Part shown: positions 1-14,459 of the stretch, one piece after another
Layout: every line of letters starts with the position of its first letter
How positions within the stretch are numbered: position 1 is the stretch's first letter
DNA from: Vitrella brassicaformis CCMP3155
Taxonomy: Eukaryota; Protista; Chromerida
Length of the DNA stretch: 15,681 nt
Assembly: GCA_001179505.1 (NCBI GenBank)
Contig: CDMY01000845.1
Span: 1-15,681 of the forward strand
Direction: 5' to 3'
The notes under the pieces: model-generated
The model's input: only the letters and a program-made list of their open reading frames with translations
Told to the model about the DNA's origin: nothing
Databases searched by the model: none
Translations under genes and position numbers: made by a program

Positions 1-3000
1 GGCGAGCGCATCGAGCTCGACGGTGGGGCGTCGGCCTCGAGTGCGAGCGCCAGCTCGGCCAGCGAGGCGGGCGCCGCCGGACCAGGCAAGTACCTCTTCA
101 GGGCCAGGATCGAGCTCAAGGAGCTGCAGCAACAGTCACCCGAGCGGTCCCTCTCACTGGCCTCGGGTGAGGCCCTCCCGCCGCCCGACGAGAAGCAGCC
201 GACCACGCCCTACGCCTCACGCCAGGGGCGCGGTGAGGTGGGGAATGTGTGCATGTCGTCGTCCCTGCCGGCGTCGTCAGTGCTGAGCCGAACCTCCACC
301 CCACGTGCAGCCGGGGGGGCTGGGGACGCTGCGGCCTGGTACCTGTCGGAGAGACGGACATCCAAATGGGTCTTCGAGTAAGAGAAGCACATCTGGCTCA
401 GGGCTTTGGACAGACAGACCAATTAATGACGCATGTCGTCTGTCTGTTGTCGTGCTTGTGGCTGCAGGGAGCTGGCCCGCCGCTTCCCGAGTGAGTTTGT
501 GGTGCGCATTATCAAGGCTGGGGAACTTGAGCTCGAGACGGGAGTCATTGAGATCGACGATCTGCTGCCTGAGTAAGGACGGAAGGATGAATGCACTGCA
601 CGGCGTCAAGACGTGCATGATGCGAACGAATCTCTCTGTCTGGCTGTCTGTGTGTTGTGTTGGGTCGGTGTGTGTGTGTGTGCAGGGAGGGAGTTGTGGA
701 CGACTTGCCGGAGCACCAGAGGGAGAAGAAGAAGCACCAGGCGCTCGTGTCGCTTATCGTCGGCATCGCCTGCCAGAGGAAGCGCCTCGGCACCCCCGCA
801 CAGAAGCGCAAGATCAGCAACGTCCCATCCAAGGCCGCTCGGGACCTCTCGCGCTTCTCGTCCCCCATCCGCCCCATCCACCACGCAATCACCGACGGCC
901 CACCCTCCCTCGCCGCCGGATCGGCCCCCGCACACGCGGGCCTCGAGGCCCACTCACTCGTGTCGTCGCCAGACACCGGTCTGCAGGACAACGGCTTCCC
1001 CCCGCTGCACGCGGGCAGCCAGCCCAAACCTGTCATCTCGGAGGGCGCCGCGAGGACCATCGGACAGCCGCCATCGAGCTACGCTGACAACACTGGTGGC
1101 TCCGAGGGCGGACCGCTGCTGTCGCCCATGACAGAGGGTGGCCCGAGGGGCGACGACCAGTTCTACTCGCCGATGGGAGGGTCGTCGGTGGAGGTGTCGC
1201 CTCTCAGACAGAGGGGCGGCGACGGCCTCCCGCCCTTCCCATCCACACTGGGCGCTGGAGGGCCCCCAGAGCCGCCATCGGCTGACGCCACGAGCAGCGG
1301 CATGCTGGCCGGACCCCCCCCCTACCTCAGCGCCATCTCCGGTGCTGGCGGTGCGGGGGACAGTGTGATGGGTTCGCCCTTCCCCATCTCAGCCGAGGGC
1401 TTCGGAGGCGGCGTCTATGCACCCATCGGCATGCCCCGCAAAGGCTCGGCTCCCCGGCTCCCGCCGCACTTCCAGAGCCCCGACCCCCTGCAGCAACAGA
1501 GGCTCAGACGCGCTTCCCAGCCGGACATCCCCGTGGTGCCATCCGCCTTTGGCGGGTCGTCTGACGTGTCGTTCGAGTCGCCCATGAGACCGCCGGGGCT
1601 CGAGCCCGCCGACCAGAGCGGCAGTACTGTGAGGATGACAGCGGGCGAGGGCCTGCCGTGCATGCAACACGGGCTGGGGTTCAGCCTCGGGATGGAGAGG
1701 GAGCTGCCCTTCGTCACCGTCCCGCGGCCGCCGATCGACTCGCACAAGCGGTTCTTCCCCATGGCGTGGCATCGCGACCAGGGCCACCTCACCGCCACAC
1801 CACCGGGTCCCCAACACATGGGCCATCCTATGGGGGCGACGACGGGCTACGGCGGGTTCGGAGCACCTGGTGGTGGGATTGGGTCGACTTACGCGGACCC
1901 TACCGCCATGAGGGGCATCTCCCCCGGCCCCTACAACATGGCCAGTGTGGCGGGCGCCCTGCAGGCCACCCCTGAGCACCCCCCACCTCCGTCTTTCGGC
2001 CACGACGCCCTCAGCAAGGGCGCTGGGCTGCCTCTCTCGATGCCCTCCCCCATCATGGGCACGCCCATGCCCAAGATGGCGGGTGGGGCTGCCGTCGGCT
2101 CGTCGTCTTCATCGGTCGCGTCGCCACCCCACCAGGACAAGCCGACCCCATTGGCCGAGGGAGAGGGAGAGGAGGGAGAAGGTGGTCTTGACATGGATGA
2201 GGGCAAGGAGGCCATCCCGCGGCCGACACGAGAGCAGCTGTTGGCGTGCAACCCGCAGCTGATCCCGCACCTGCGGCCGCGTGAGTTGGAGTTTGAGGGC
2301 GGTCCGCGGTTCACGCGAGAGGGGCGTGTGCTGATGATGAAGAACGTGCGGGGTGACGTGACTTTGGACGAGATCCAGAGGGAGGTCAAGCGGGGCGGCG
2401 AGCCGGTCCGCATTCTCATCGACATCCAGAACGAGGACCAAGCCGTGCGGCGGTTCCTGGATGGCAGCGACCTCCAGATGCCCGGACAGCCTAACCTAGA
2501 GATCTACACCGAATACCCAGTGGTCAGTCAGTCAGTCGCCCAACAGACAGCCATGAACAGAACCAGAACACCCATGTAGTGTCCGCCTCTGCTCATTTGT
2601 TCCTTCAGAATACGCTGGCCGTGCGCAACTTCATGATCATGTCTCCCCTTCTGATCGACCCCAACTCCATCTCGGAAAACGAGGCCACGGCCATGATTGG
2701 CCGGTGGAAGGAGGCCGACCCCGCCCACCCCGCCACCAAAGAGCAAGCCGTCACCGATCACAAGAAGAAGACCCCTAGTATCACCACCAAGAACCCTGCC
2801 GGTGCCCTCAAACACATCAACACGTCGGCGGTCCACGGCGTGCCGCTCAGCAAGAGGGTGGGGCCGGCCCTTGAGGCTGCGGCCAGGGAGGCTGGCATCG
2901 TCGCCGTCAAGGCTGCCTGCAAGGCCAACGACCCCAATCCGGCTTACCCCCACCCCTACGCCCCCGCACCGGCACAGGCAAACACAAGCAGCAGCTTCCG

Positions 3001-7135: not shown

Positions 7136-7981
7136 GACGGGTGGAAAGTTGACACTGATGTGTTGAGCCGTGTACCTGGTCCGAGGACAGACGAGCCACG
7201 GAGCTGGGCACTCCGAAAGGCGCTTCGTGAATAGACCGACGCGCACAGAGAGATGGCACCAGCAACATCACCACGATCACCACATTGCTCATTGTCATCC
7301 TGCGACAAAGTCGTTGTGCCCTGGCGCTGACTGCTTCTCGAACGCCCGTGCGCAGCAGCAGGAGAGAGCTTGTACCAAAGCGAAGCAAGGGATGGACGAA
7401 TTAAGACTAGAGCAGGTCTGATCTGCTTACTTGTACAACACGAGAGCTGATCTTACTCTCTGCGAGCTCGCAGTTTCAAGCTCGCATTTCCTCAAATGAA
7501 GCTTCCAGGCCTTTGTTTCGATTGTTTCTTTGCCTGACTGTACGTGAAGCCTCAATGCGGAGCGATTCATGCAGAAAAATCGCAAAACGAATTTGCCAGG
7601 CTCGAGAAACCCGGCAATTCGATCCTCACTCGATCCAACTCGGGAGCAAACAGGAGTTTGGGACACTTTGGCGCCCCGCTGAGCTCATCACAAGCTTCGA
7701 TGGCCGTGAGCGGCGCGGGACACGACCCCGTCAACTTAGTAAGGCAAAATCATGCGAGCTTTTGCGACACACGTTTCCAAGAAGAATTCTTTCAAACACA
7801 GATTCGTGTGTCTCGTCTCCTACGTTTCTTGTGATCCCACCACGACTGTTAGAAGCCGTGTGTCGAATAACTCAGAAGGAAGCGAATTTGAGCCAAGCGT
7901 TTCCTCCGTGCCGGCGTGGATGCACGACACTGGTAGAAGCATACAAATGGCATCGTCGTCGCTCTCGTCCAGTTTGTGTAG
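7136..7981. promoter_or_regulatory. Shared upstream region (putative bidirectional promoter and 5' UTRs) of divergent genes 2 and 3
   Basis: The genes are head-to-head. The region is visibly less GC-rich and free of microsatellites. A strong minus-strand donor (gtaagc) at 7430 suggests a spliced 5' leader. Confidence 0.5.
7460..7473. promoter_or_regulatory. Perfect 14-bp palindrome CTGCGAGCTCGCAG, candidate transcription-factor site
   Basis: Self-complementary and located in the divergent upstream region. The 13-mer TCTGCGAGCTCGC (7459-7471) recurs at 12927-12939. Confidence 0.4.
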
Positions 7982-8089
7982 GGCTTCTTTCCCTTCAAAC
8001 CGTTGCTGTGGGTAAGTAAAGTGTGAGCATCGACAGAAGCGCTCTATCCGCTGACGATGTAGCAGGAAGATCCGCAGCGTTGGCGACAT

Positions 8090-10595
8090 ATGAAGAAGAT
8101 CGGGATGGTGACGGCGCCCGACATGGGCTTTGTGGCCGCCAAAACCGGGTTTCGGCTCTTCATGGCGGCCGAGCGACCAAAGCACGCCGACAAGACCATC
8201 ACGGAGGCCACGCAGCTGGTGCGCCGACAGTGGGAACAAATGTCCGAGGATGAAGAACAAGGTAGGTAGGTATGCAGACACACCACACGCACGCACACGG
8301 ATGGATGGATGGATGATCTGCAATGACAACTTCTCTTTGGCAGCATGGGAGTCACGCGCCGCCCAGAACCATGCCGCTGCAGCCCCATCTCCGCAGGACG
8401 TCCCGCCGGCTGCCCATGTGGAGGAGACCGCCATGCCGCCAGCGGCTGAGGAGCCCCCGCGGCCCGCAGACGAGGAGGGAGGAGATCTCGAATATGGGGA
8501 TGATGGCCCTGAGGTGGATGACGAACTCATGGACGAACTCATGGGCGACCACGCCGCGGACGTCGATATGGATGTGGAAATGGAGGGGGGGGCGATAGGA
8601 GAGGATGACCATGGTGGCGAGGGTGTGGTTGAGGGGGACGGTGAGAGGGATGACCAGGTAGCAGCAGAAGGGGGCGGCGAGGAGGGGGGCATCGACGCAG
8701 ACGGGCCTGACGGTGTGGATGTGGGTGGTGGGGGTGGTGACGGCTCGGATGGCACCGACAACACAGCGGCCAAGCCTGCCCCCGGCCCCAAGCCGAAGCG
8801 CAACCAGTCGGCCTACATGCTGTTCCTCCAGGCCCAGCGTATCAAGCGGGCAGACCAGGAGAAGAGCAGAAAAGAACAACAGCAGCAGCAGGAGGAGGGG
8901 AATGGCACTGAGGGCAACGCTATTGTAGTCGAGGATGCCGCCGACGGGCAGCAGGGCAAGAAGAAAAAGGCAAATGTAAGTACTCACACGCGGGGAGGGA
9001 GAGGGAGAAGCCTTGATTAAGTGAGGGACCCATCTCTTTGTCCGTCTGTCTTGTCCGTGTGGCTGTCTGTGGACGCATTGCAGGCTACGGAGCAGACGAA
9101 GGAGTTCTCTGCCATATGGCGCAACCTCACGGCCGAGCAGAAGAAGGTCAGCCAGTCAGCCAATCCTAAATGCCATCCATCCATTTCTTCGTCCCATCCT
9201 GGTGTGTATCAGGTGTGGGAGAGGGCTGCTGCCGAGGACAAGGAGCGCTACACACGGGAGCTGCAGCAGTGGGTACGTCAGGCACACAAACATGCACACA
9301 CACGCAATTCACTTAGCCGTCTTTTCGTTGTCGTGTCTGCAGAAGGATGCGGGCGGCGTAGAGGACGACAAGACGTCTGGGTCAGTCGGGGGGCGGGCGG
9401 GCGGGCAGGCAGGCAGCCAGCCAAGCCGTGACACACAATTGCATCCCCCTGCACGACATTGTTCAGTGATGGTGCCGGATCGGTGTTCACCGCCCTGCCC
9501 CTCTCCCGCGTAGTCAAGTGCATCAAATTTGAAGACGACGTCAAACAGGTACCACTCATTGCAGACAGACAGACAGACAGACAGAGACGCGCAGAGAGAG
9601 GAGCTTGTGTGGATGGCCAACCCTTCACTCACGTGTGCATGCAGGTGACCAAGGCCGCCCAGAAGCTCATAGGTGGCGCCACGGTAAGTGAATAAATCGC
9701 AGAGCTCTCCTCTTCACTCGTGTGTCTATCTCACGGTACGTCTCACTGTGTCCCTGTAGGTGTTGTTTCTGCGTGCCCTGGCCGAGAGCGCCAGCCGCAA
9801 TCGGGGCACCAGACAGACCATCTTCCTCGCAGACGTCGGTGAGTGGAGTGAGTCGGCAAACCCTCACTCACCTCAGCACCTACCCACCCATCCGATCCAT
9901 CCATCCATCATGGTCTCTGTCTTTCTTTCTCTTTTTAGACACGGCGTCGTCGCGTTCGATGCGTTTTCATTTCCTGAAGGACAGCCTGGTGGAGTTGGCC
10001 AATGCACAGGCCACCAGCAAGGCCGCCAAGGCGGCAAAGGCCGGCGGCGGCGGCGAGGGGCGAGATGGGAGTGGGGGTGGCGGTGGGAATGGGGCCAAGC
10101 AGCGCGCTAAGGGCAAGGGCAAGGCGCCGCAGCTCAAGGGTGAGTGGGTGGGATAATACACAGCTTATGCACACGCGCCTTTCTTATGTCTCTTATTGTG
10201 CGTGGGTGCCTTCAGTGACGGATCTGGCGATCAACCCCTTCACGCTTGCGGCCAAGAACAAGAAGAAGCCTCCCCAAGAGCACCACCACCACCAGCCAGC
10301 CGACCAGGACAACCCCATTGACGCAGACGACGACCACCAGCAGCCGAGTCCCTCAAACGGGGAGACTGGTAATGCCGCTGCTGCTGGGGCTGGTGGTGCT
10401 GCTCATCGTGGCGGCCGGGCTGCGGGTGGTGCGTCCAGCAGCGGTGGGGCTGTCAGTGGAAAGAAGCGCAAGGCTGCCGGTGGTGGTGGTGTCAAAAAGG
10501 GAGGCAACAAGAAGGCCAAGGCCGACAGACAGGCGGCCAAGGAGGGGCTGCCCCAAGGCGTCCAGCCCATCACGGCCTTCTTCACCAGACACTGA
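8090..10595 (+). CDS. HMG-box (x2) plus histone-fold (CBFD_NFYB_HMF-like; NF-YC/CHRAC1/DPB3 type) fusion protein, ~581 aa. Exons 8090-8261, 8344-8975, 9084-9146, 9213-9272, 9343-9380, 9467-9548, 9645-9683, 9760-9838, 9939-10139, 10216-10595.
   Basis: Nine GT-AG introns give a 1746-nt frame ending at TGA 10593-10595. HMG1: KTGFRLFMAAERPKHADKTITEATQLVRRQWEQMSEDEEQAWESRA. HMG2: PKPKRNQSAYMLFLQAQR...ATEQTKEFSAIWRNLTAEQKKVWERAAAEDKERYTRELQQW. Histone fold: LPLSRVVKCIKFEDDVKQVTKAAQKLIGGATVLFLRALAESASRNRGTRQTIFLADVDTASSRSMRFHFLKDSL. The start may lie further upstream: an in-frame 30-nt exon at 7982-8011 (GFFPFKPLLW) splices to an acceptor at 8065. Confidence 0.88.
8138..8375 (+). other. HMG-box 1 (degenerate), split by intron 8262-8343
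   Basis: GFRLF (helix 1 aromatics), TITEATQLVRRQWEQMSEDEEQAW (helix 2, W-x-x-M-S, helix 3 start). The usual KERY end of helix 3 is absent. Confidence 0.7.
8787..9272 (+). other. HMG-box 2 with a long loop insertion, spread over three exons
   Basis: The canonical PKR-x-x-SAYMLF start, W-R-N-L-T-x-E-Q-K-K-x-W and DKERY-x-x-E motifs are all present after splicing. Confidence 0.9.
9495..9988 (+). other. Histone-fold domain of the H2A-like NF-YC/DRAP1/CHRAC1/POLE4 type, spread over four exons
   Basis: LPLSRVVKCIK matches the LP-x-x-R-I/V-K-x-I-x-K start. ATVLFLRALAE matches A-x-E-L-F-I-x-x-L-A. RQTIFLADV matches R-K-T-I-x-x-x-D-I/V, and RFHFLKDSL matches the F-x-F-L-x-D end. Recognised by eye. 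Confidence 0.82.
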
Positions 10596-10855
10596 CTGAC
10601 AGACGGACGGACCTACTAGTGCTAGAAGGAGGGTGGGAGGGTGGGGACGGCAGGGCCTTCTGAGGTCCATGTCTGTCTGTCGGGTTGTTCGATTTGCTTG
10701 TCGACTAGAGACTCCATGGACGGTGCGTGTAGTGGGCTTGGTCGGATGCCCTTCATGGCTTCGATGATTGCATCCACATCCAAGAGATTGAGTGGACCCA
10801 TGCGACCGAGCGAAGTGCACTCGAATTCTAGGTATGTTCCCTTCGACAAGACACC

Positions 10856-10880
10856 CAGACAGACAGACAGACAGACAGAC
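10856..10880 (+). repeat. (CAGA)6 microsatellite
   Basis: Read directly. Confidence 0.95.
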
Positions 10881-11167
10881 ACGCAAAAGTCCAAACCTCT
10901 CTACGATCCTCAGCTTTGGCAGCTCACACGGTGTCCGCCCTCCCGCCCTTGACGAGTGTCTACACACTAGCTTGCTGGCGAAAAATAAAGACAATGATGG
11001 CTGGTATGTACCTACCGACCTGCCTACCTACGAGCACTCATAATCATGCATCGGTCATGAACGCATGTCTGTCTGTCTGTCTCTGTGCGGCACCCTCAAC
11101 AAAAAGGCACTCAAAAATACACACACCACCCGGTGCGCACTTGTCCGCGCACACATGGACCAAACAG

Positions 11168-12747
11168 TCATGCATAGCCTACCGAGCCACACACACACAC
11201 AGGGCACACCAGTGGGCTTTGCTTTGATTGAGTAGTACACCGGTGTGTACTTCGTCGCGTCAGTCAAAGTGCGTACGTACCAGCTCTGTGTGCGAGTAGT
11301 TTGAGCTGCTCCAGCCACAGAAACATGAAGATCGAGTGGCCCCCACCACGGCCGAAGTACGGCCAGAAGCCCTTCCACAGGGACAGAGGGCCCTCCAACG
11401 AGCCGATGCGCCACATCGTCTGGGAGGGACCAACCAACATAGCACACGCAGACAGACACATGAGATGCTCTGGTGCATGCGTCTGGTGTGAGCTTGACTG
11501 ATGTTCGAGCCGGCACCTGGAAGATGTTTCTGTACTGAGGTATCTCGCCCGCCGGGGTCTTCTGGTTCTGCATCCTGGTCTTGGCGATGTCGAAGGGCAG
11601 CGACGCCGCGGAATAGGTGAAGCCGCTGATCAGAGAGGCCGAGAAATGGAGACCAACCTGACACACAGACATACACAAACACAGAGAGAGGAGAGAGAGA
11701 GAGAGAGAGAGAGAGGTTCTTTAATGCACACAGAAGCCTTCAAGCTTGACCGATTTACTGACCCCCTTGAGTGGCGTCATGGCCATGAGGACCTCCTTAG
11801 CCTGGTCATAGCTGCCGAACTGCACCATGTTGACGACCATTGCCCGTGCGACAGTCGGTGTGGACCCCCTCCAGCACGTTAGAATGCCCTCCTCTTTGGC
11901 TATCCTGTACAAGGCGTTGAAGACGTTAGTGTAGCCCCGCCGCTCGGCCACCGGCAACCGGCCGTCTGCCTGCATCCGCACCAACGATACCTCCACAGGA
12001 CAGCAGACGACAGACGCAATGGCGCCCGATGTGAGGCCGCAGCCGAGCTTGACGGCCACTGTCGGGTTGGCACCCGGCACCGTGTAGCGGTCCCTCAGGC
12101 TGACAAGACACGGTGAGCGGCACTTCCTGTGTGAGCCTGTGCGTCTGTCTGTCTTTGTGGCCCACGTACATTTGATAGAGTCCGCCTCTCAGTGTGGTGT
12201 AAGTTGCCTGCCGCGTGATGCCCGCACTCAAACCGCTGACACACAGACAGACAGACAAGAGCAATCGTCCAGACAGCAGCATTGTGTCGTCGGCGTGGTT
12301 CACGTGTGATTCGTTCACCTGTACAGTCCCCAAAGGCCCTCCGTCTTAAATATCTTGGCCACCGCATCCACACTGTTCTGCACAGAAACATACATGCAAC
12401 CGAGCATGGCGGCGGAGGAGAGGACCGTGCTGCGCTGACTGACCACCGAGCTGACACGCACAGCGATTCTGTCTGTCTGTCTGTCTGTCGGTCTCTGCAC
12501 GAGTACCTTGTAGAGCTTCGTCCCGCCGCCCTCAGCGTTGAGCTGCATCCGAATCTTCAACACTGAATCAATCAACACAACAAACCATTCACACACAGAG
12601 AGAGAGAATAACATTCTCGGAGTGTGTGTGCACCGCACCATCGAAGGGGTGAACTGGCAGCCAGCCAAGAATCCCGGCGCTGCCCGAGAGCAGCAGCGTC
12701 ATGCCTGGGGAGGGCTTGAATGTCGGAGGACTTGCAGATCCACTCAT
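11168..12747 (-). CDS. Mitochondrial carrier family (SLC25) protein, 2-oxoglutarate/malate-dicarboxylate carrier group, ~305 aa. Exons 12747-12639, 12562-12507, 12377-12319, 12235-12170, 12099-11763, 11657-11517, 11419-11281, 11178-11168.
   Basis: Three carrier signatures: PFDVLKIRMQL, PVEVSLVRMQADGRLP and PFDIAKTRMQNQ. OGC-type segments: GLSAGITRQATYTTLR, PTVARAMVVNMVQFGSYDQAKE, LWKGFWPYFGR..H....LEQL. All introns are GT-AG and phase-compatible. If the last donor (11280) is unused, the protein ends ...HRAGTYAL at TGA 11266-11264. The exact orthologue is uncertain, so no gene symbol is given. Confidence 0.95.
11691..11715 (+). repeat. (GA)12 microsatellite inside a carrier-gene intron (polypyrimidine tract on the minus strand)
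   Basis: Read directly, within intron 11762-11658. Confidence 0.9.
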
Positions 12748-13152: not shown

Positions 13153-14459
13153 ATGGCACTTGAGGACCTCCACTTCAACCTCGCCACCACCATGGTCCCT
13201 GAGGAAGGCGCCCTCCCCACCATCCGCACCATGCCACCGACACGCAGCGGCGCTCTACCAACCTCGCGTAACCCGGCTGCTGCTGTTGTGCTGTCTCAGC
13301 ACTTGTCTCAGCTGGGTGATGCACAGCTTCAGCACATCTATCATCTGGCGCGTTGCCGCACCATCGAGCTGTGGATTGTGGTGGTTGGCGCCTTCACATG
13401 CTGCATTCCTGTTGCCTGCGTCGGTGGCGGGCTGTTCGTCGGTGCCACTCTGTCGGCCGTCGTTGCCTCCTGGGATGCTGTCCTGCTCAGCAAGAGCCAG
13501 GAGATGATGATCGAGTCCAGGAAGGTGCTGGGACATCGAGGCGTCACCAAACTGGACAGCTGGAGCACTGAGGGCGTGTGCAAGAAGGACGTCGACTGGG
13601 CTATTGTCAAAGGCGTCGGCAAGCTGATCCTCAAGATTACTCTTGCTGTCCTTCCGTGGGAAATGATGTTCGCGGCAGTTGGTCAGGCCATAGCAGAGGC
13701 GAGCATGGAGGCAGTCATGGAGCGGATGGATGTGATGATGGAGAAGCTGGTGGGTCAGGTGGGTCAGATGGTGCATCTGGATGCCATCTTGACCCAGTTG
13801 GAGGGCAGAATGCCCTGGATGCTGAAGGCAGCAGCATGGGTCGGGAAAGGGCTGGGCCTGGGAGACAAGATCAAGGAGATCCTCGAGCTTGTTGGCAAAG
13901 GTGAGAATGCCAACACGCGCAGACTAGTCAATTGGCCCCTCTGTTGCTCTGTTGCTTTACGACCTCTTTAATGCGTGCAGGCATGGCTCGTGCGGTCAAG
14001 AATGCTTTTGACGAGTCCCGAGAGGAGTGGCACATCATCTTGAAGGACTTCTTCAACGAAGCGGCGCAGAGTACAGAAGATCTGACGGAAGATATGAGGG
14101 ACGACCTGCGACAGAAGCTTCGCCAAGTCTTCGATGACAACCTGAAGAAGAGCCTCGACAAGGAAGTGGACTTCGGGGCTCTCGGTGAGGGAGCTGCCGA
14201 AGAGGCGGCAGAGCGCATCAGCGACTTTACCGATGACAGCATTGACGACTACGCAGACCAGGCATTCAACGCTGCTGCCGAGGGCGTGAAGTTCCGTCTC
14301 CAGGCGCAAGCCGTGGGACAAGCGACCGGCTACATCGTGCAGCTGGCCAACAAGCTGCGCAAATTGTCGAGCAAGCAGCTCGGCCGCGAGAAGTACTACA
14401 AGTGCTTTCAGGAGTATCTAGCTCAGAAGACGGCCAACGCACTCACTGCTAGCGCATAA
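13153..14459 (+). CDS. Hypothetical 408-aa protein with an N-terminal hydrophobic hairpin and a long helical C-terminus. Exons 13153-13900, 13981-14459.
   Basis: ORFs 13153-13971 and 13932-14459 are joined by a phase-1 GT-AG intron 13901-13980 (gtgaga...gcgtgcag), ending at TAA 14457-14459. Hydrophobic segment: LWIVVVGAFTCCIPVACVGGGLFVGATLSAVVASW. No family recognised. Confidence 0.82.

What the first reader, a model, noticed from the sequence alone, without database searches (positions are those of the whole stretch)
8090..10595. Single polypeptide fusing two HMG boxes, an acidic tract, an NF-YC/CHRAC/DPB3-type histone fold and a PIP-like tail
Seen: after splicing ten exons the order is HMG1, D/E/G-rich tract (~8469-8760), HMG2, histone fold, K/G-rich basic tail, VQPITAFF. 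The six-frame track hides this because the fold is cut into 39-82-nt exons. Established: in yeast, animals and plants the H2A-like folds (NF-YC, DRAP1, CHRAC1, POLE4/Dpb3) are normally small stand-alone proteins that dimerise with an H2B-like partner. HMGB1 and the CHRAC histone-fold pair both assist ACF/ISWI nucleosome sliding, Dpb3-Dpb4 chaperones parental H3-H4 at the fork, and SSRP1 couples an acidic domain to an HMG box. Inference: this could be a fused DNA-bending, histone-chaperone or nucleosome-sliding module tied to replication. I cannot establish from here whether the architecture is already catalogued in protists.
Basis: partly seen in the sequence, partly recalled or inferred. Interest (0 to 1): 0.75.

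Follow-up and report, generated by a model that had tools for sequence, protein, structure and literature searches.

The report
HMG-box, histone-fold, PCNA-motif fusion protein
In the alga Vitrella brassicaformis, a free-living relative of malaria parasites, one spliced gene makes a single 581-residue protein that joins DNA-bending HMG boxes, a very acidic tract, a histone-like dimerisation fold and a tail that looks able to grip the replication clamp PCNA, parts that normally sit on separate proteins.

Summary
The gene model holds. Ten GT..AG coding exons (8090-10595, + strand) give 581 codons. Spliced RNA contigs from two studies carry eight of the nine coding introns as joints. One 1304-nt contig runs from the acidic tract to the 3' UTR with introns 2-9 removed to the base.

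- **HMG box 2** is solid.
- **The acidic tract** is real: 97 aa, net charge -37.
- **The histone fold** tiles an NF-YC-type (H2A-like) core collinearly across exons 6-9. Every exon beats shuffled controls, but no Pfam profile hit exists at exon level.
- **"HMG1"** is at best a degenerate half-box.
- **The C-terminal VQPITAFF** docks into the PIP pocket of Vitrella PCNA in a controlled model (0.77 against 0.02).

The genome has its own canonical NF-YB and NF-YC, plus a Dpb4/POLE3-like H2B-type protein that is the likeliest partner. The function is inferred: a PCNA-tethered DNA-bending and histone-handling module. The fold's subfamily (Dpb3/POLE4, CHRAC, NC2-alpha) is unresolved.

No relatives or papers describing this architecture were found, but the searches could not reach long fusion proteins. 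The joined protein was never searched. I rate it a new variant of known kinds, of moderate interest.

The parts
7491..8089 (+). 5' leader: non-coding exon (at least 7491-7738), 5' UTR intron 7739-7852 (GT..AG), then UTR 7853-8089 with an in-frame stop at 8060-8062 and short upstream ORFs
   Evidence: Spliced RNA contigs X5 record 17 and X6 record 20; translation of the spliced leader
8090..8261 (+). Coding exon 1 (ATG 8090; ends in phase 1): HMG-like half-box ('HMG1')
   Evidence: Intron 1 joint 8261/8344 in X5 and X6. Residues 35-57 match the helix-2 region of the genome's own HMG exons (1/1000 shuffles); residues 1-34 are not significant. No Pfam, PDB or Foldseek hit.
8344..8975 (+). Coding exon 2: end of the HMG-like box, an A/P-rich linker, the acidic tract and the start of HMG2
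   Evidence: Open frame; RNA contigs
8469..8759 (+). Acidic D/E/G-rich tract, 97 aa, net charge -37
   Evidence: Composition
8793..8858 (+). HMG box 2, N-terminal strand and helix 1 (PKRNQSAYMLF...). A roughly 39-aa Q/E/K-rich insertion follows, up to 8975.
   Evidence: Pfam HMG_box positions 1-22, E 0.0085; own-genome scan; 0/500 shuffles
9084..9146 (+). Coding exon 3: HMG box 2, helix 2
   Evidence: Pfam HMG_box_2 positions 33-51; 0/500 shuffles; joints 8975/9084 and 9146/9213
9213..9272 (+). Coding exon 4: HMG box 2, helix 3
   Evidence: Pfam HMG_box_5 positions 51-68, E 0.0048; 0/500 shuffles; joint 9272/9343
9343..9380 (+). Coding exon 5: short acidic linker (38 nt)
   Evidence: Frame logic; length arithmetic of X5 record 18
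9467..9548 (+). Coding exon 6: histone fold alpha1 and L1 (ALPLSRVVKCIKFEDDVKQ)
   Evidence: The only PDB hit is S. pombe Dpb3, 5y26_B. It is the best of 508 six-frame pieces of the window against a local NF-YC HMM, E 0.047. 0/300 shuffles reach its score. BLASTP gives 55% identity over 20 aa, E 1e-6.
9645..9683 (+). Coding exon 7: start of histone fold alpha2
   Evidence: Position-fixed test at core 25-37, p about 0.02
9760..9838 (+). Coding exon 8: rest of alpha2, L2 and start of alpha3
   Evidence: Global test on core 38-65, 0/400 shuffles; the last 11 aa have their best register exactly at the predicted core position 55; joints 9683/9760 and 9838/9939
9939..10139 (+). Coding exon 9: alpha3 and alphaC with the F.FL.D motif (to about 10010), then a K/G/A-rich basic stretch (10004-10139)
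   Evidence: 3/300 shuffles, core 67-80; BLASTP 64% identity over 14 aa, E 3e-4; composition
10216..10595 (+). Coding exon 10: low-complexity tail with basic NLS-like clusters (10461-10520) and the stop TGA at 10593-10595
   Evidence: Joint 10139/10216; translation
10560..10583 (+). C-terminal PIP-like motif VQPITAFF
   Evidence: Sequence. Complex model with Vitrella PCNA P0144: score 0.77, best control 0.02, with I118, F121 and F122 central.

Best explanation
**Shown**
A spliced, expressed Vitrella gene encodes one 581-aa protein. In order it has: a degenerate HMG-like half-box, a 97-aa acidic tract, a genuine HMG box carrying a loop insertion, an H2A-like histone fold of the NF-YC/Dpb3/DRAP1 class, a basic K/G-rich tail, and a C-terminal PIP-like motif.

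**Inferred**
- The fold cannot stand alone. It most likely heterodimerises with the genome's Dpb4/POLE3/CHRAC-14-like H2B-type protein (contig C394).
- That would make this protein the Dpb3/POLE4-like or Dls1/CHRAC-15-like partner of that pair.
- The HMG box and the basic tail bind and bend DNA.
- The acidic tract either binds histones or folds back on the basic parts, as in HMGB1 and SSRP1.
- The C-terminal motif tethers the whole module to PCNA, so it acts on chromatin at or behind replication forks, handling histones or loosening nucleosomes.
For: - **Splicing and continuity:**
- **HMG2:**
- **Acidic tract:**
- **Histone fold:**
  - Exon 6 gives S. pombe Dpb3 as its only PDB hit.
  - Exon 6 is the top piece of the whole window against a local NF-YC HMM.
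  - Exons 6 and 9 anchor at core positions 4-23 and 67-80. The spliced product puts 41 residues between the anchors where the fold has 43.
  - Exons 7 and 8 pass tests at the positions those anchors predict.
- **It is not the NF-YC of this genome:** canonical NF-YB sits on C337 and NF-YC on C534.
- **A partner exists:** the C394 exon's best PDB matches are S. pombe Dpb4 (E 2.4e-6) and Drosophila CHRAC-14.
- **PCNA:**
  - The model scores 0.77 against a best control of 0.02. That mark was reached by 51 of 78 solved complexes and 2 of 108 mismatched pairs.
  - The runs agree in at least 70% of contacts, and the partner's pLDDT is at least 56.
  - Contacts fall on PCNA residues 40, 43-47, 124-129, 232-233 and 252-257, which is the classical PIP site.
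Against: - No Pfam hit for the fold on any single exon.
- Exons 7-9 gave nothing against a local NF-YC HMM or PDB sequences.
- The subfamily rests on one marginal hit (E 1.2).
- The motif is Q-x-I-x-x-F-F, one residue short of the canonical Q-x-x-[ILM]-x-x-[FY][FY].
- PIP-PCNA complexes are abundant among solved structures, so the model's pass may reflect likeness rather than binding. The test is also uncalibrated for peptides and disordered chains.
- The partner inference comes from a genome scan that scored only nine candidates and is blind to intron-split genes.
- No orthologue was found, so conservation of the fusion is unknown.
Confidence: 0.4

Rival explanations
1. It is a lineage-specific architectural chromatin protein. 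The histone fold pairs with an unidentified partner or another copy, and the C-terminal FF motif is not a working PCNA tether. There would then be no special link to replication.
For: HMG-box fusions seem common in this genome (earlier notes s1-218506 and s1-235919). No orthologue or literature precedent was found. The motif is non-canonical. The complex model can pass from likeness alone.
Against: The tail docks in the exact PIP site with a large margin over controls. A motif at the extreme C-terminus with basic clusters just upstream is the usual layout of PCNA-binding tails (established knowledge).
Confidence: 0.25
2. It is the CHRAC-15/16 or Dls1 equivalent. It would pair with the Dpb4-like protein inside an ISWI-type remodeller, with the HMG boxes built in to do what free HMGB1 does for ACF/CHRAC sliding.
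For: The Dpb4-like exon also matches Drosophila CHRAC-14. The LPLSR start of alpha1 is, from memory, shared with CHRAC-15-type proteins (a lead, not a test). Dpb4 serves both Pol epsilon and ISW2 in yeast (PMC8346560).
Against: Nothing here separates Dls1/CHRAC-15 from Dpb3/POLE4. A PCNA tether is not a known feature of CHRAC subunits.
Confidence: 0.15
3. It is a transcription regulator of the NC2-alpha/DRAP1 type, or an alternative NF-YC-like subunit, pairing with NC2-beta or NF-YB.
For: The F.FLKD motif after alpha3 and the alpha1 motif are common to the whole H2A-like class. All local tests used NF-YC cores as the yardstick.
Against: The residues nearly invariant in NF-YC alpha2 (W, H, NKRRTLQ) are absent from exon 8. 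The genome has a canonical NF-YC. No NC2-beta-like exon was among the nine candidates scored.
Confidence: 0.12
4. The 'histone fold' is a chance resemblance in a helical linker, and the protein is simply an HMG-box protein with long disordered regions.
For: No profile hit at exon level. Two of the four exon tests are only at p of 0.01-0.02.
Against: Four separate exons fit collinear, pre-specified positions. The spacing between the two anchors is within two residues of the fold's length. The alpha1 motif is 55% identical to NF-YC over 20 aa.
Confidence: 0.07

Closest known systems
Dpb3/POLE4 with Dpb4/POLE3 (DNA polymerase epsilon accessory histone-fold pair)
   Same: It has an H2A-like fold with an LPLSRV-type alpha1; S. 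pombe Dpb3 is the only PDB sequence hit of exon 6. A Dpb4-like partner is present in the genome. The pair is a known H3-H4 chaperone at the fork (PMC6179962).
   Different: Known Dpb3/POLE4 proteins are small and stand alone, without HMG boxes or a PCNA motif of their own. Membership was not established here.
CHRAC-15/17 (Drosophila CHRAC-14/16; yeast Dls1-Dpb4) of ISWI remodellers
   Same: The same H2A-like/H2B-like pairing logic, and the same shared Dpb4-type partner (PMC8346560).
   Different: There the DNA-bending help comes from separate HMGB1 (from memory). Here an HMG box sits on the same chain.
NF-YC and NC2-alpha/DRAP1
   Same: The alpha1 motif, the overall length of the fold and the F.FL.D motif after alpha3.
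   Different: It lacks the near-invariant NF-YC alpha2 residues. The genome has a separate canonical NF-YC and NF-YB.
HMGB1/2 and SSRP1 (HMG boxes combined with acidic tracts)
   Same: An HMG box on one chain with a long acidic tract. In HMGB1 the acidic tract modulates DNA binding, and in SSRP1/FACT it contacts histones (established knowledge).
   Different: Here the acidic tract lies between a degenerate half-box and a full box. HMG2 carries an insertion of about 39 aa between helices 1 and 2. No known HMGB or SSRP1 carries a histone fold.
C-terminal PIP boxes (for example the MQTLESFF-type tail of DNA polymerase eta, recalled from memory)
   Same: A hydrophobic-Q-x-[IL]-x-x-F-F layout at the extreme C-terminus, modelled in the PCNA pocket.
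   Different: The Q is one residue nearer the aliphatic residue than in the canonical consensus. Binding is untested.
Plasmodium oocyst rupture proteins ORP1/ORP2
   Same: They are a precedent, among relatives of Vitrella, for NF-Y-type histone folds embedded in larger proteins. ORP1 (9rif_A) appeared among PDB hits of the genome's NF-YB and Dpb4-like exons.
   Different: They have no HMG boxes and, from memory, a non-nuclear role. No similarity to this protein was tested.

Membership tests
HMG box (Pfam PF00505 and clan), box 2 | N-terminal PKRP.SAY.LF strand and helix 1, helix 2 with conserved W, and helix 3, in collinear order | tested here: met
   Exon 2 maps to HMG_box positions 1-22 (E 0.0085), exon 3 to HMG_box_2 positions 33-51, and exon 4 to HMG_box_5 positions 51-68. 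Each exon beats 500/500 shuffles against the genome's own HMG exons.
HMG box (Pfam PF00505), box 2 | Whole-domain score above Pfam's gathering cut-off | not tested
Each exon alone scores 14.5-17.3 bits, below the 22-25 bit cut-offs.
HMG box, 'box 1' (exon 1) | Three-helix L-shaped box recognisable by profile or fold | tested here: inconclusive
   No Pfam hit, and the PDB hits are chance matches. The AF2 model has two helices at pLDDT 71.5, with no Foldseek match. Only residues 35-57 resemble the helix-2 region (1/1000 shuffles); residues 1-34 are not significant.
CBFD_NFYB_HMF histone fold (PF00808), H2A-like branch | alpha1 motif LP[LI][AS]R[IV]..[IV].K followed by an acidic L1 | tested here: met
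CBFD_NFYB_HMF histone fold (PF00808), H2A-like branch | alpha2-L2-alpha3 of the right length and collinear, then the F.FL.D motif | tested here: met
   41 residues against 43 between the anchors. Exon 7 p 0.02, exon 8 0/400, exon 9 3/300.
CBFD_NFYB_HMF histone fold (PF00808) | Profile hit above the gathering cut-off | tested here: inconclusive
   No hit on single exons or on the intron read-through pieces. The own-genome family scan did not pick the window. The joined fold was not searched.
NF-YC proper | Near-invariant alpha2 and L2 residues (for example W, IH, NKRRTLQ) | tested here: not met
   The invariant columns of 21 NF-YC sequences are not present in exon 8. A local NF-YC HMM gives no signal for exons 7-9. 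A canonical NF-YC lies elsewhere in the genome.
Dpb3/POLE4 | Closer to Dpb3/POLE4 than to other H2A-like folds | tested here: inconclusive
   The only evidence is the exon 6 hit to 5y26_B at E 1.2. No Dpb3/POLE4 sequences could be fetched for a tree.
Dpb3/POLE4 or Dls1/CHRAC-15 | A Dpb4/POLE3-type H2B-like partner exists in the same genome | tested here: met
   The G000 C394 exon matches S. pombe Dpb4 at E 2.4e-6 and CHRAC-14 at E 4.8e-4.
Dpb3/POLE4 or Dls1/CHRAC-15 | Physical heterodimer with the Dpb4-type protein | not testable with these tools
   Both genes are split by introns, so no reference exists for either whole fold.
PIP box | Canonical Q-x-x-[ILM]-x-x-[FY]-[FY] | tested here: not met
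   The sequence is V-Q-P-I-T-A-F-F. The I-x-x-F-F core is present, but the Q is one residue too close.
PIP box | Docks under the interdomain connecting loop of PCNA | tested here: met
   This holds in a model only: score 0.77 against a best control of 0.02, with contacts at PCNA 40, 43-47, 124-129, 232-233 and 252-257. It is not a measurement of binding.

The most novel reading that the evidence does not exclude
This is the chromerid (perhaps myzozoan-wide) Dpb3/POLE4 subunit of DNA polymerase epsilon. It would have acquired HMG boxes, a histone-binding acidic tract and its own PCNA tether. The leading-strand module that hands on parental histones would then be a single DNA-bending, clamp-bound chain. 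That would be a natural 'Rosetta stone' fusion, arguing that HMGB-type bending, the Dpb3-Dpb4 pair and PCNA work together at the fork in other eukaryotes too.
Probability: 0.2. Interest if true: 0.75.

Novelty: new variant of a known kind. Interest (0 to 1): 0.55.

Why it matters
Natural fusions often reveal which separate proteins work together. In animals and yeast the following are all separate players in moving or re-depositing nucleosomes:
- HMGB proteins
- the Dpb3-Dpb4 and CHRAC histone-fold pairs
- acidic histone-binding tails
- PCNA

A single chain carrying all four features would give a directly testable model of how they cooperate. It sits in a free-living, culturable relative of apicomplexan parasites, whose replication-coupled chromatin machinery is poorly known. 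If the fusion turns out to be confined to Vitrella, it is a curiosity of domain shuffling in a genome that seems rich in HMG-box fusions.

Tried and rejected
- **Pfam on every exon and on stop-free read-through pieces.** There was no histone-fold hit and no hit for exon 1.
- **PDB sequence search.** Exon 8 and the start of exon 9 gave nothing. Exon 6 plus its read-through gave a chance LysR hit. Exon 1 gave chance adenovirus hexon hits.
- **Exhaustive HMMER search of 1.84 billion representatives with exon 2.** It returned 0 hits, not even the protein itself. A self-hit would have scored E 1e-125. The protein is therefore absent or withheld from that collection, although Vitrella PCNA is present. 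This is unexplained.
- **The three word searches.**
  - Two went on fetching NF-YC yardstick sequences.
  - One went on PCNA.
  - None could reach a 581-aa fusion, because of the length window.
  - No Dpb3, POLE4, CHRAC-15 or DRAP1 sequences could be obtained, so no subfamily tree was built.
- **Other searches that found nothing useful.**
  - ESM Atlas feature search of the exon 6-7 piece gave no usable hit.
  - A metagenome scan with the same piece matched 600 patterns but found no relative.
  - Own-genome searches for further H2A-like exons, with exon 6 and with a chytrid NF-YC, found only the query's own exon and the canonical NF-YC.
- **AF2 of exon 1 plus Foldseek.** No match.
- **Literature.** Five searches and two papers were checked, with no description of an HMG plus histone-fold fusion.
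- **Rejected readings.**
  - The antisense ORF 7820-8803 is a low-complexity S/P artefact opposite the acidic tract, and the intron signals are all on the + strand.
  - The coding region does not extend upstream, because of the in-frame stop at 8060.
Full report
**Source.** The window is contig C845 of a 72.7-Mb assembly in 1064 contigs. An exon of the assembly's PCNA gene is 100% identical to a protein that NCBI and UniRef label Vitrella brassicaformis CCMP3155 (P0144). Earlier notes of this scan name the same organism. Vitrella is an alveolate in Colpodellida.

**Gene model.**
- Reading the three forward frames and checking splice signals and phases gives ten coding exons: 8090-8261, 8344-8975, 9084-9146, 9213-9272, 9343-9380, 9467-9548, 9645-9683, 9760-9838, 9939-10139 and 10216-10595.
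- All introns are GT..AG. The total is 1746 nt, or 581 aa plus the stop codon.
- The ATG is at 8090, not 8091 (my own slip). An in-frame stop lies ten codons upstream.

**RNA evidence.**
- None of the runs is on record as RNA, but X5 and X6 (two studies) hold spliced contigs.
- Joints are listed for the 5' UTR intron (7739-7852) and for introns 1, 2, 3, 4, 7, 8 and 9.
- Introns 5 and 6 lie next to masked repeats and are not listed. They are still shown by arithmetic: X5 record 18 is 1304 nt and spans 8647-10628 (1982 nt). The missing 678 nt equal exactly the summed lengths of introns 2-9 (108+66+70+86+96+76+100+76).
- The acidic tract, HMG2, all fold exons and the tail are therefore on one contig.
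- X5 record 17 (7491-7738, 7853-8259, 8342-8668) links the leader, exon 1 and exon 2.
- Records 17 and 18 overlap by only 22 nt, inside the uninterrupted 632-nt exon 2. A single mRNA is the simplest reading but is not strictly proven.
- Contigs cannot give strand or level. The strand follows from the intron signals.

**Operators' rule.** The spliced protein has no reference. It was never sent to any search, fold or complex tool, and all tests below were made exon by exon. The joined step (Pfam, a big search or a fold of the 581-aa protein) was left out and is listed under decisive next steps.

**HMG box 2.**
- Pfam places exon 2 residues 150-171 on HMG_box positions 1-22 (E 0.0085), exon 3 on HMG_box_2 positions 33-51, and exon 4 on HMG_box_5 positions 51-68 (E 0.0048). 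The hits are collinear, but each is under the gathering score on its own.
- I compared the exons with 20 HMG-box exons of the same genome. The three exons score 45, 43 and 63, where shuffles give about 26 +/- 4. None of 500 shuffles reaches any of the three scores.
- A Q/E/K-rich insertion of about 39 aa separates helix 1 from helix 2.

**'HMG1'.**
- Exon 1 has no Pfam hit, and its PDB hits are chance matches.
- Residues 35-57 (KTITEATQLVRRQWEQMSEDEE) align with the helix-2 region of an HMG exon (1/1000 shuffles). Residues 1-34 do not (576/1000). Control stretches of the same protein do not.
- An AF2 model shows two helices at pLDDT 71.5, with no Foldseek match.
- I call it a degenerate half-box.

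**Acidic tract.** The stretch 8469-8759 is 97 aa, 39% D+E, 28% G, with net charge -37.

**Histone fold.**
- *No direct hits.* No single exon gives a Pfam hit, and the genome-wide PF00808 scan did not pick the window.
- *Exon 6.* Its only PDB sequence hit is S. pombe Dpb3 (5y26_B, TVLPLSRVKRIIKQDEDV, E 1.2).
- *Local yardstick.* I fetched 122 NF-YC proteins and built a local HMM from them.
  - Of all 508 six-frame pieces of the window, the best match is the exon 6 piece on the alpha1 positions (8.5 bits, E 0.047).
  - Exons 7-9 give nothing against this narrow HMM.
- *Anchors.* In pairwise tests against about 90 distinct 88-aa NF-YC cores:
  - Exon 6 scores 56 against a null of 24.9 +/- 3.9 (0/300) at core positions 4-23.
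  - The start of exon 9 scores 39 against 25.5 +/- 3.9 (3/300) at core positions 67-80, on the TA.SRS..F.FL.D stretch.
  - BLASTP confirms both: 55% identity over 20 aa at E 1e-6, and 64% over 14 aa at E 3e-4, each for a single comparison.
- *Spacing.* The two anchors predict 43 core residues between them. The spliced product supplies 41.
- *Exons 7 and 8.* With positions fixed in advance by the anchors:
  - Exon 7 at core 25-37 reaches +5.2 against -7.7 +/- 5.9 (23/1000).
  - Exon 8 on core 38-65 reaches +10.7 against -17.1 +/- 6.9 (0/400).
  - The last 11 residues of exon 8 have their best register exactly at the predicted position 55.
- *Reading.* Four exons that fit only after the RNA-confirmed splicing is a coherent signal of an H2A-like, NF-YC/Dpb3/DRAP1-class fold.
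- *Caution.* The shuffles keep composition only, and the yardstick is one subfamily.

**Which subfamily, and which partner?**
- The protein is not this genome's NF-YC. A canonical, highly conserved NF-YC lies on C534 and an NF-YB on C337 (E 1.7e-17 to plant NF-YB).
- Exon 8 lacks the residues that are invariant in NF-YC.
- A third H2B-like exon, on C394, is closest to S. pombe Dpb4 (E 2.4e-6) and Drosophila CHRAC-14.
- Dpb4-type proteins need an H2A-like partner: Dpb3/POLE4 in Pol epsilon, or Dls1/CHRAC-15 in ISWI complexes (PMC8346560, PMC6179962).
- By parity, and from the Dpb3 hit of exon 6, the window's protein is the best candidate found.
- The genome scan scored only nine candidates and misses intron-split genes. 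I could not obtain Dpb3, POLE4, CHRAC-15 or DRAP1 sequences for a tree.
- From memory, alpha2 and alpha3 look closer to POLE4 and CHRAC-15 than to NF-YC. This is a lead only.

**The tail.**
- After the fold come a K/G/A-rich basic stretch (net +8 over 45 aa), a low-complexity exon 10 with basic clusters (GKKRK...KKGGNKKAK), and VQPITAFF three residues before the end.
- The motif has the I-x-x-F-F core, but its Q is one residue nearer than in the canonical PIP consensus.
- A controlled complex prediction paired Vitrella PCNA (P0144) with residues 81-125 of exon 10.
  - The score was 0.77 in each of three runs (0.76-0.77), against a best of three controls of 0.02.
  - That mark was reached by 51 of 78 solved complexes and 2 of 108 mismatched pairs.
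  - The runs agree in at least 70% of contacts, and the partner's pLDDT is at least 56.
- I118, F121 and F122 contact PCNA residues 40, 43-47, 124-129, 232-233 and 252-257, the classical PIP site.
- The test is not calibrated for peptides, and PIP complexes are common among solved structures. This shows likeness, not binding.

**Relatives and literature.**
- The exhaustive search with exon 2 found nothing, not even the protein itself.
- The word searches cannot see proteins longer than 1.75 times a query, and no stop-free reference longer than 296 aa covers this gene.
- A metagenome scan found nothing.
- Five literature searches found no description of an HMG plus histone-fold protein.
- Absence of the architecture elsewhere is therefore not shown.
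- Earlier notes of this scan report other HMG-box fusions in the same genome.

**Verdict.** Its first HMG box is overstated, and its histone fold is supported only exon by exon. The replication-linked reading is plausible and gained support from the PCNA model and the Dpb4-like partner, but it remains inference. I class it as a new variant of known kinds, interest 0.55.

Noticed in passing
window 7491-8089: The transcript has a long 5' leader of at least 485 nt, with its own GT..AG intron (7739-7852) and several short upstream ORFs (for example the ATG at 7947 and an ATG-TAG at 8057-8062). This might regulate translation.
   Followed up: partly
window 8298-8316, 9553-9593, 10855-10880, 11066-11082: (GGAT)n and (CAGA)n microsatellites lie in introns and flanks. 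Read depth jumps to hundreds or thousands there, and false long 'joints' (8315 to 11066) arise, so these are high-copy simple repeats of this genome.
   Followed up: no
window 11055-11678 (- strand), RNA contig at 10890-11179: The downstream neighbour on the minus strand has a Mito_carr (mitochondrial carrier) exon (E 6.4e-6) and is covered by a much deeper RNA contig than the fusion gene.
   Followed up: no
window 657-2579 (+ strand): A 640-codon open frame reads like real coding sequence (a non-repetitive C-terminal part) but has no Pfam hit. It is probably the last large exon of an upstream gene.
   Followed up: no
window 13153-14459 (+ strand): Two overlapping open frames with helical, charged, protein-like sequence and no Pfam hit. 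They are probably one spliced gene.
   Followed up: no
window 9548/9645 and L003 (G000 C534) about 1686/1623 (- strand): Intron 6 of this gene and the first intron in the fold of the genome's canonical NF-YC are both phase 0 and sit one codon apart, just after alpha1/L1 (DDVKQ| against DEDVK|). This could be shared ancestry with intron sliding, or coincidence.
   Followed up: partly
G000 C385, C546, C553 (L012-L014); proteins P0144, P0148, P0221: Vitrella has three PCNA-like genes, of 263, 233 and 396 aa. Only the first was used in the complex model. Which of them the tail would prefer is open.
   Followed up: no
window 8346-8975: Exon 2 finds no protein at all among 1.84 billion representatives, although a self-hit would score E 1e-125 and other Vitrella proteins are in the collection.
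   Followed up: partly
G000 C347:290348-290634 (L033, L027): The HMG box closest to helix 3 of HMG2 (YERLKAEDRQRYNRELALW against WERAAAEDKERYTRELQQW) lies in another gene. It may be the paralogue from which the box was recruited.
   Followed up: no
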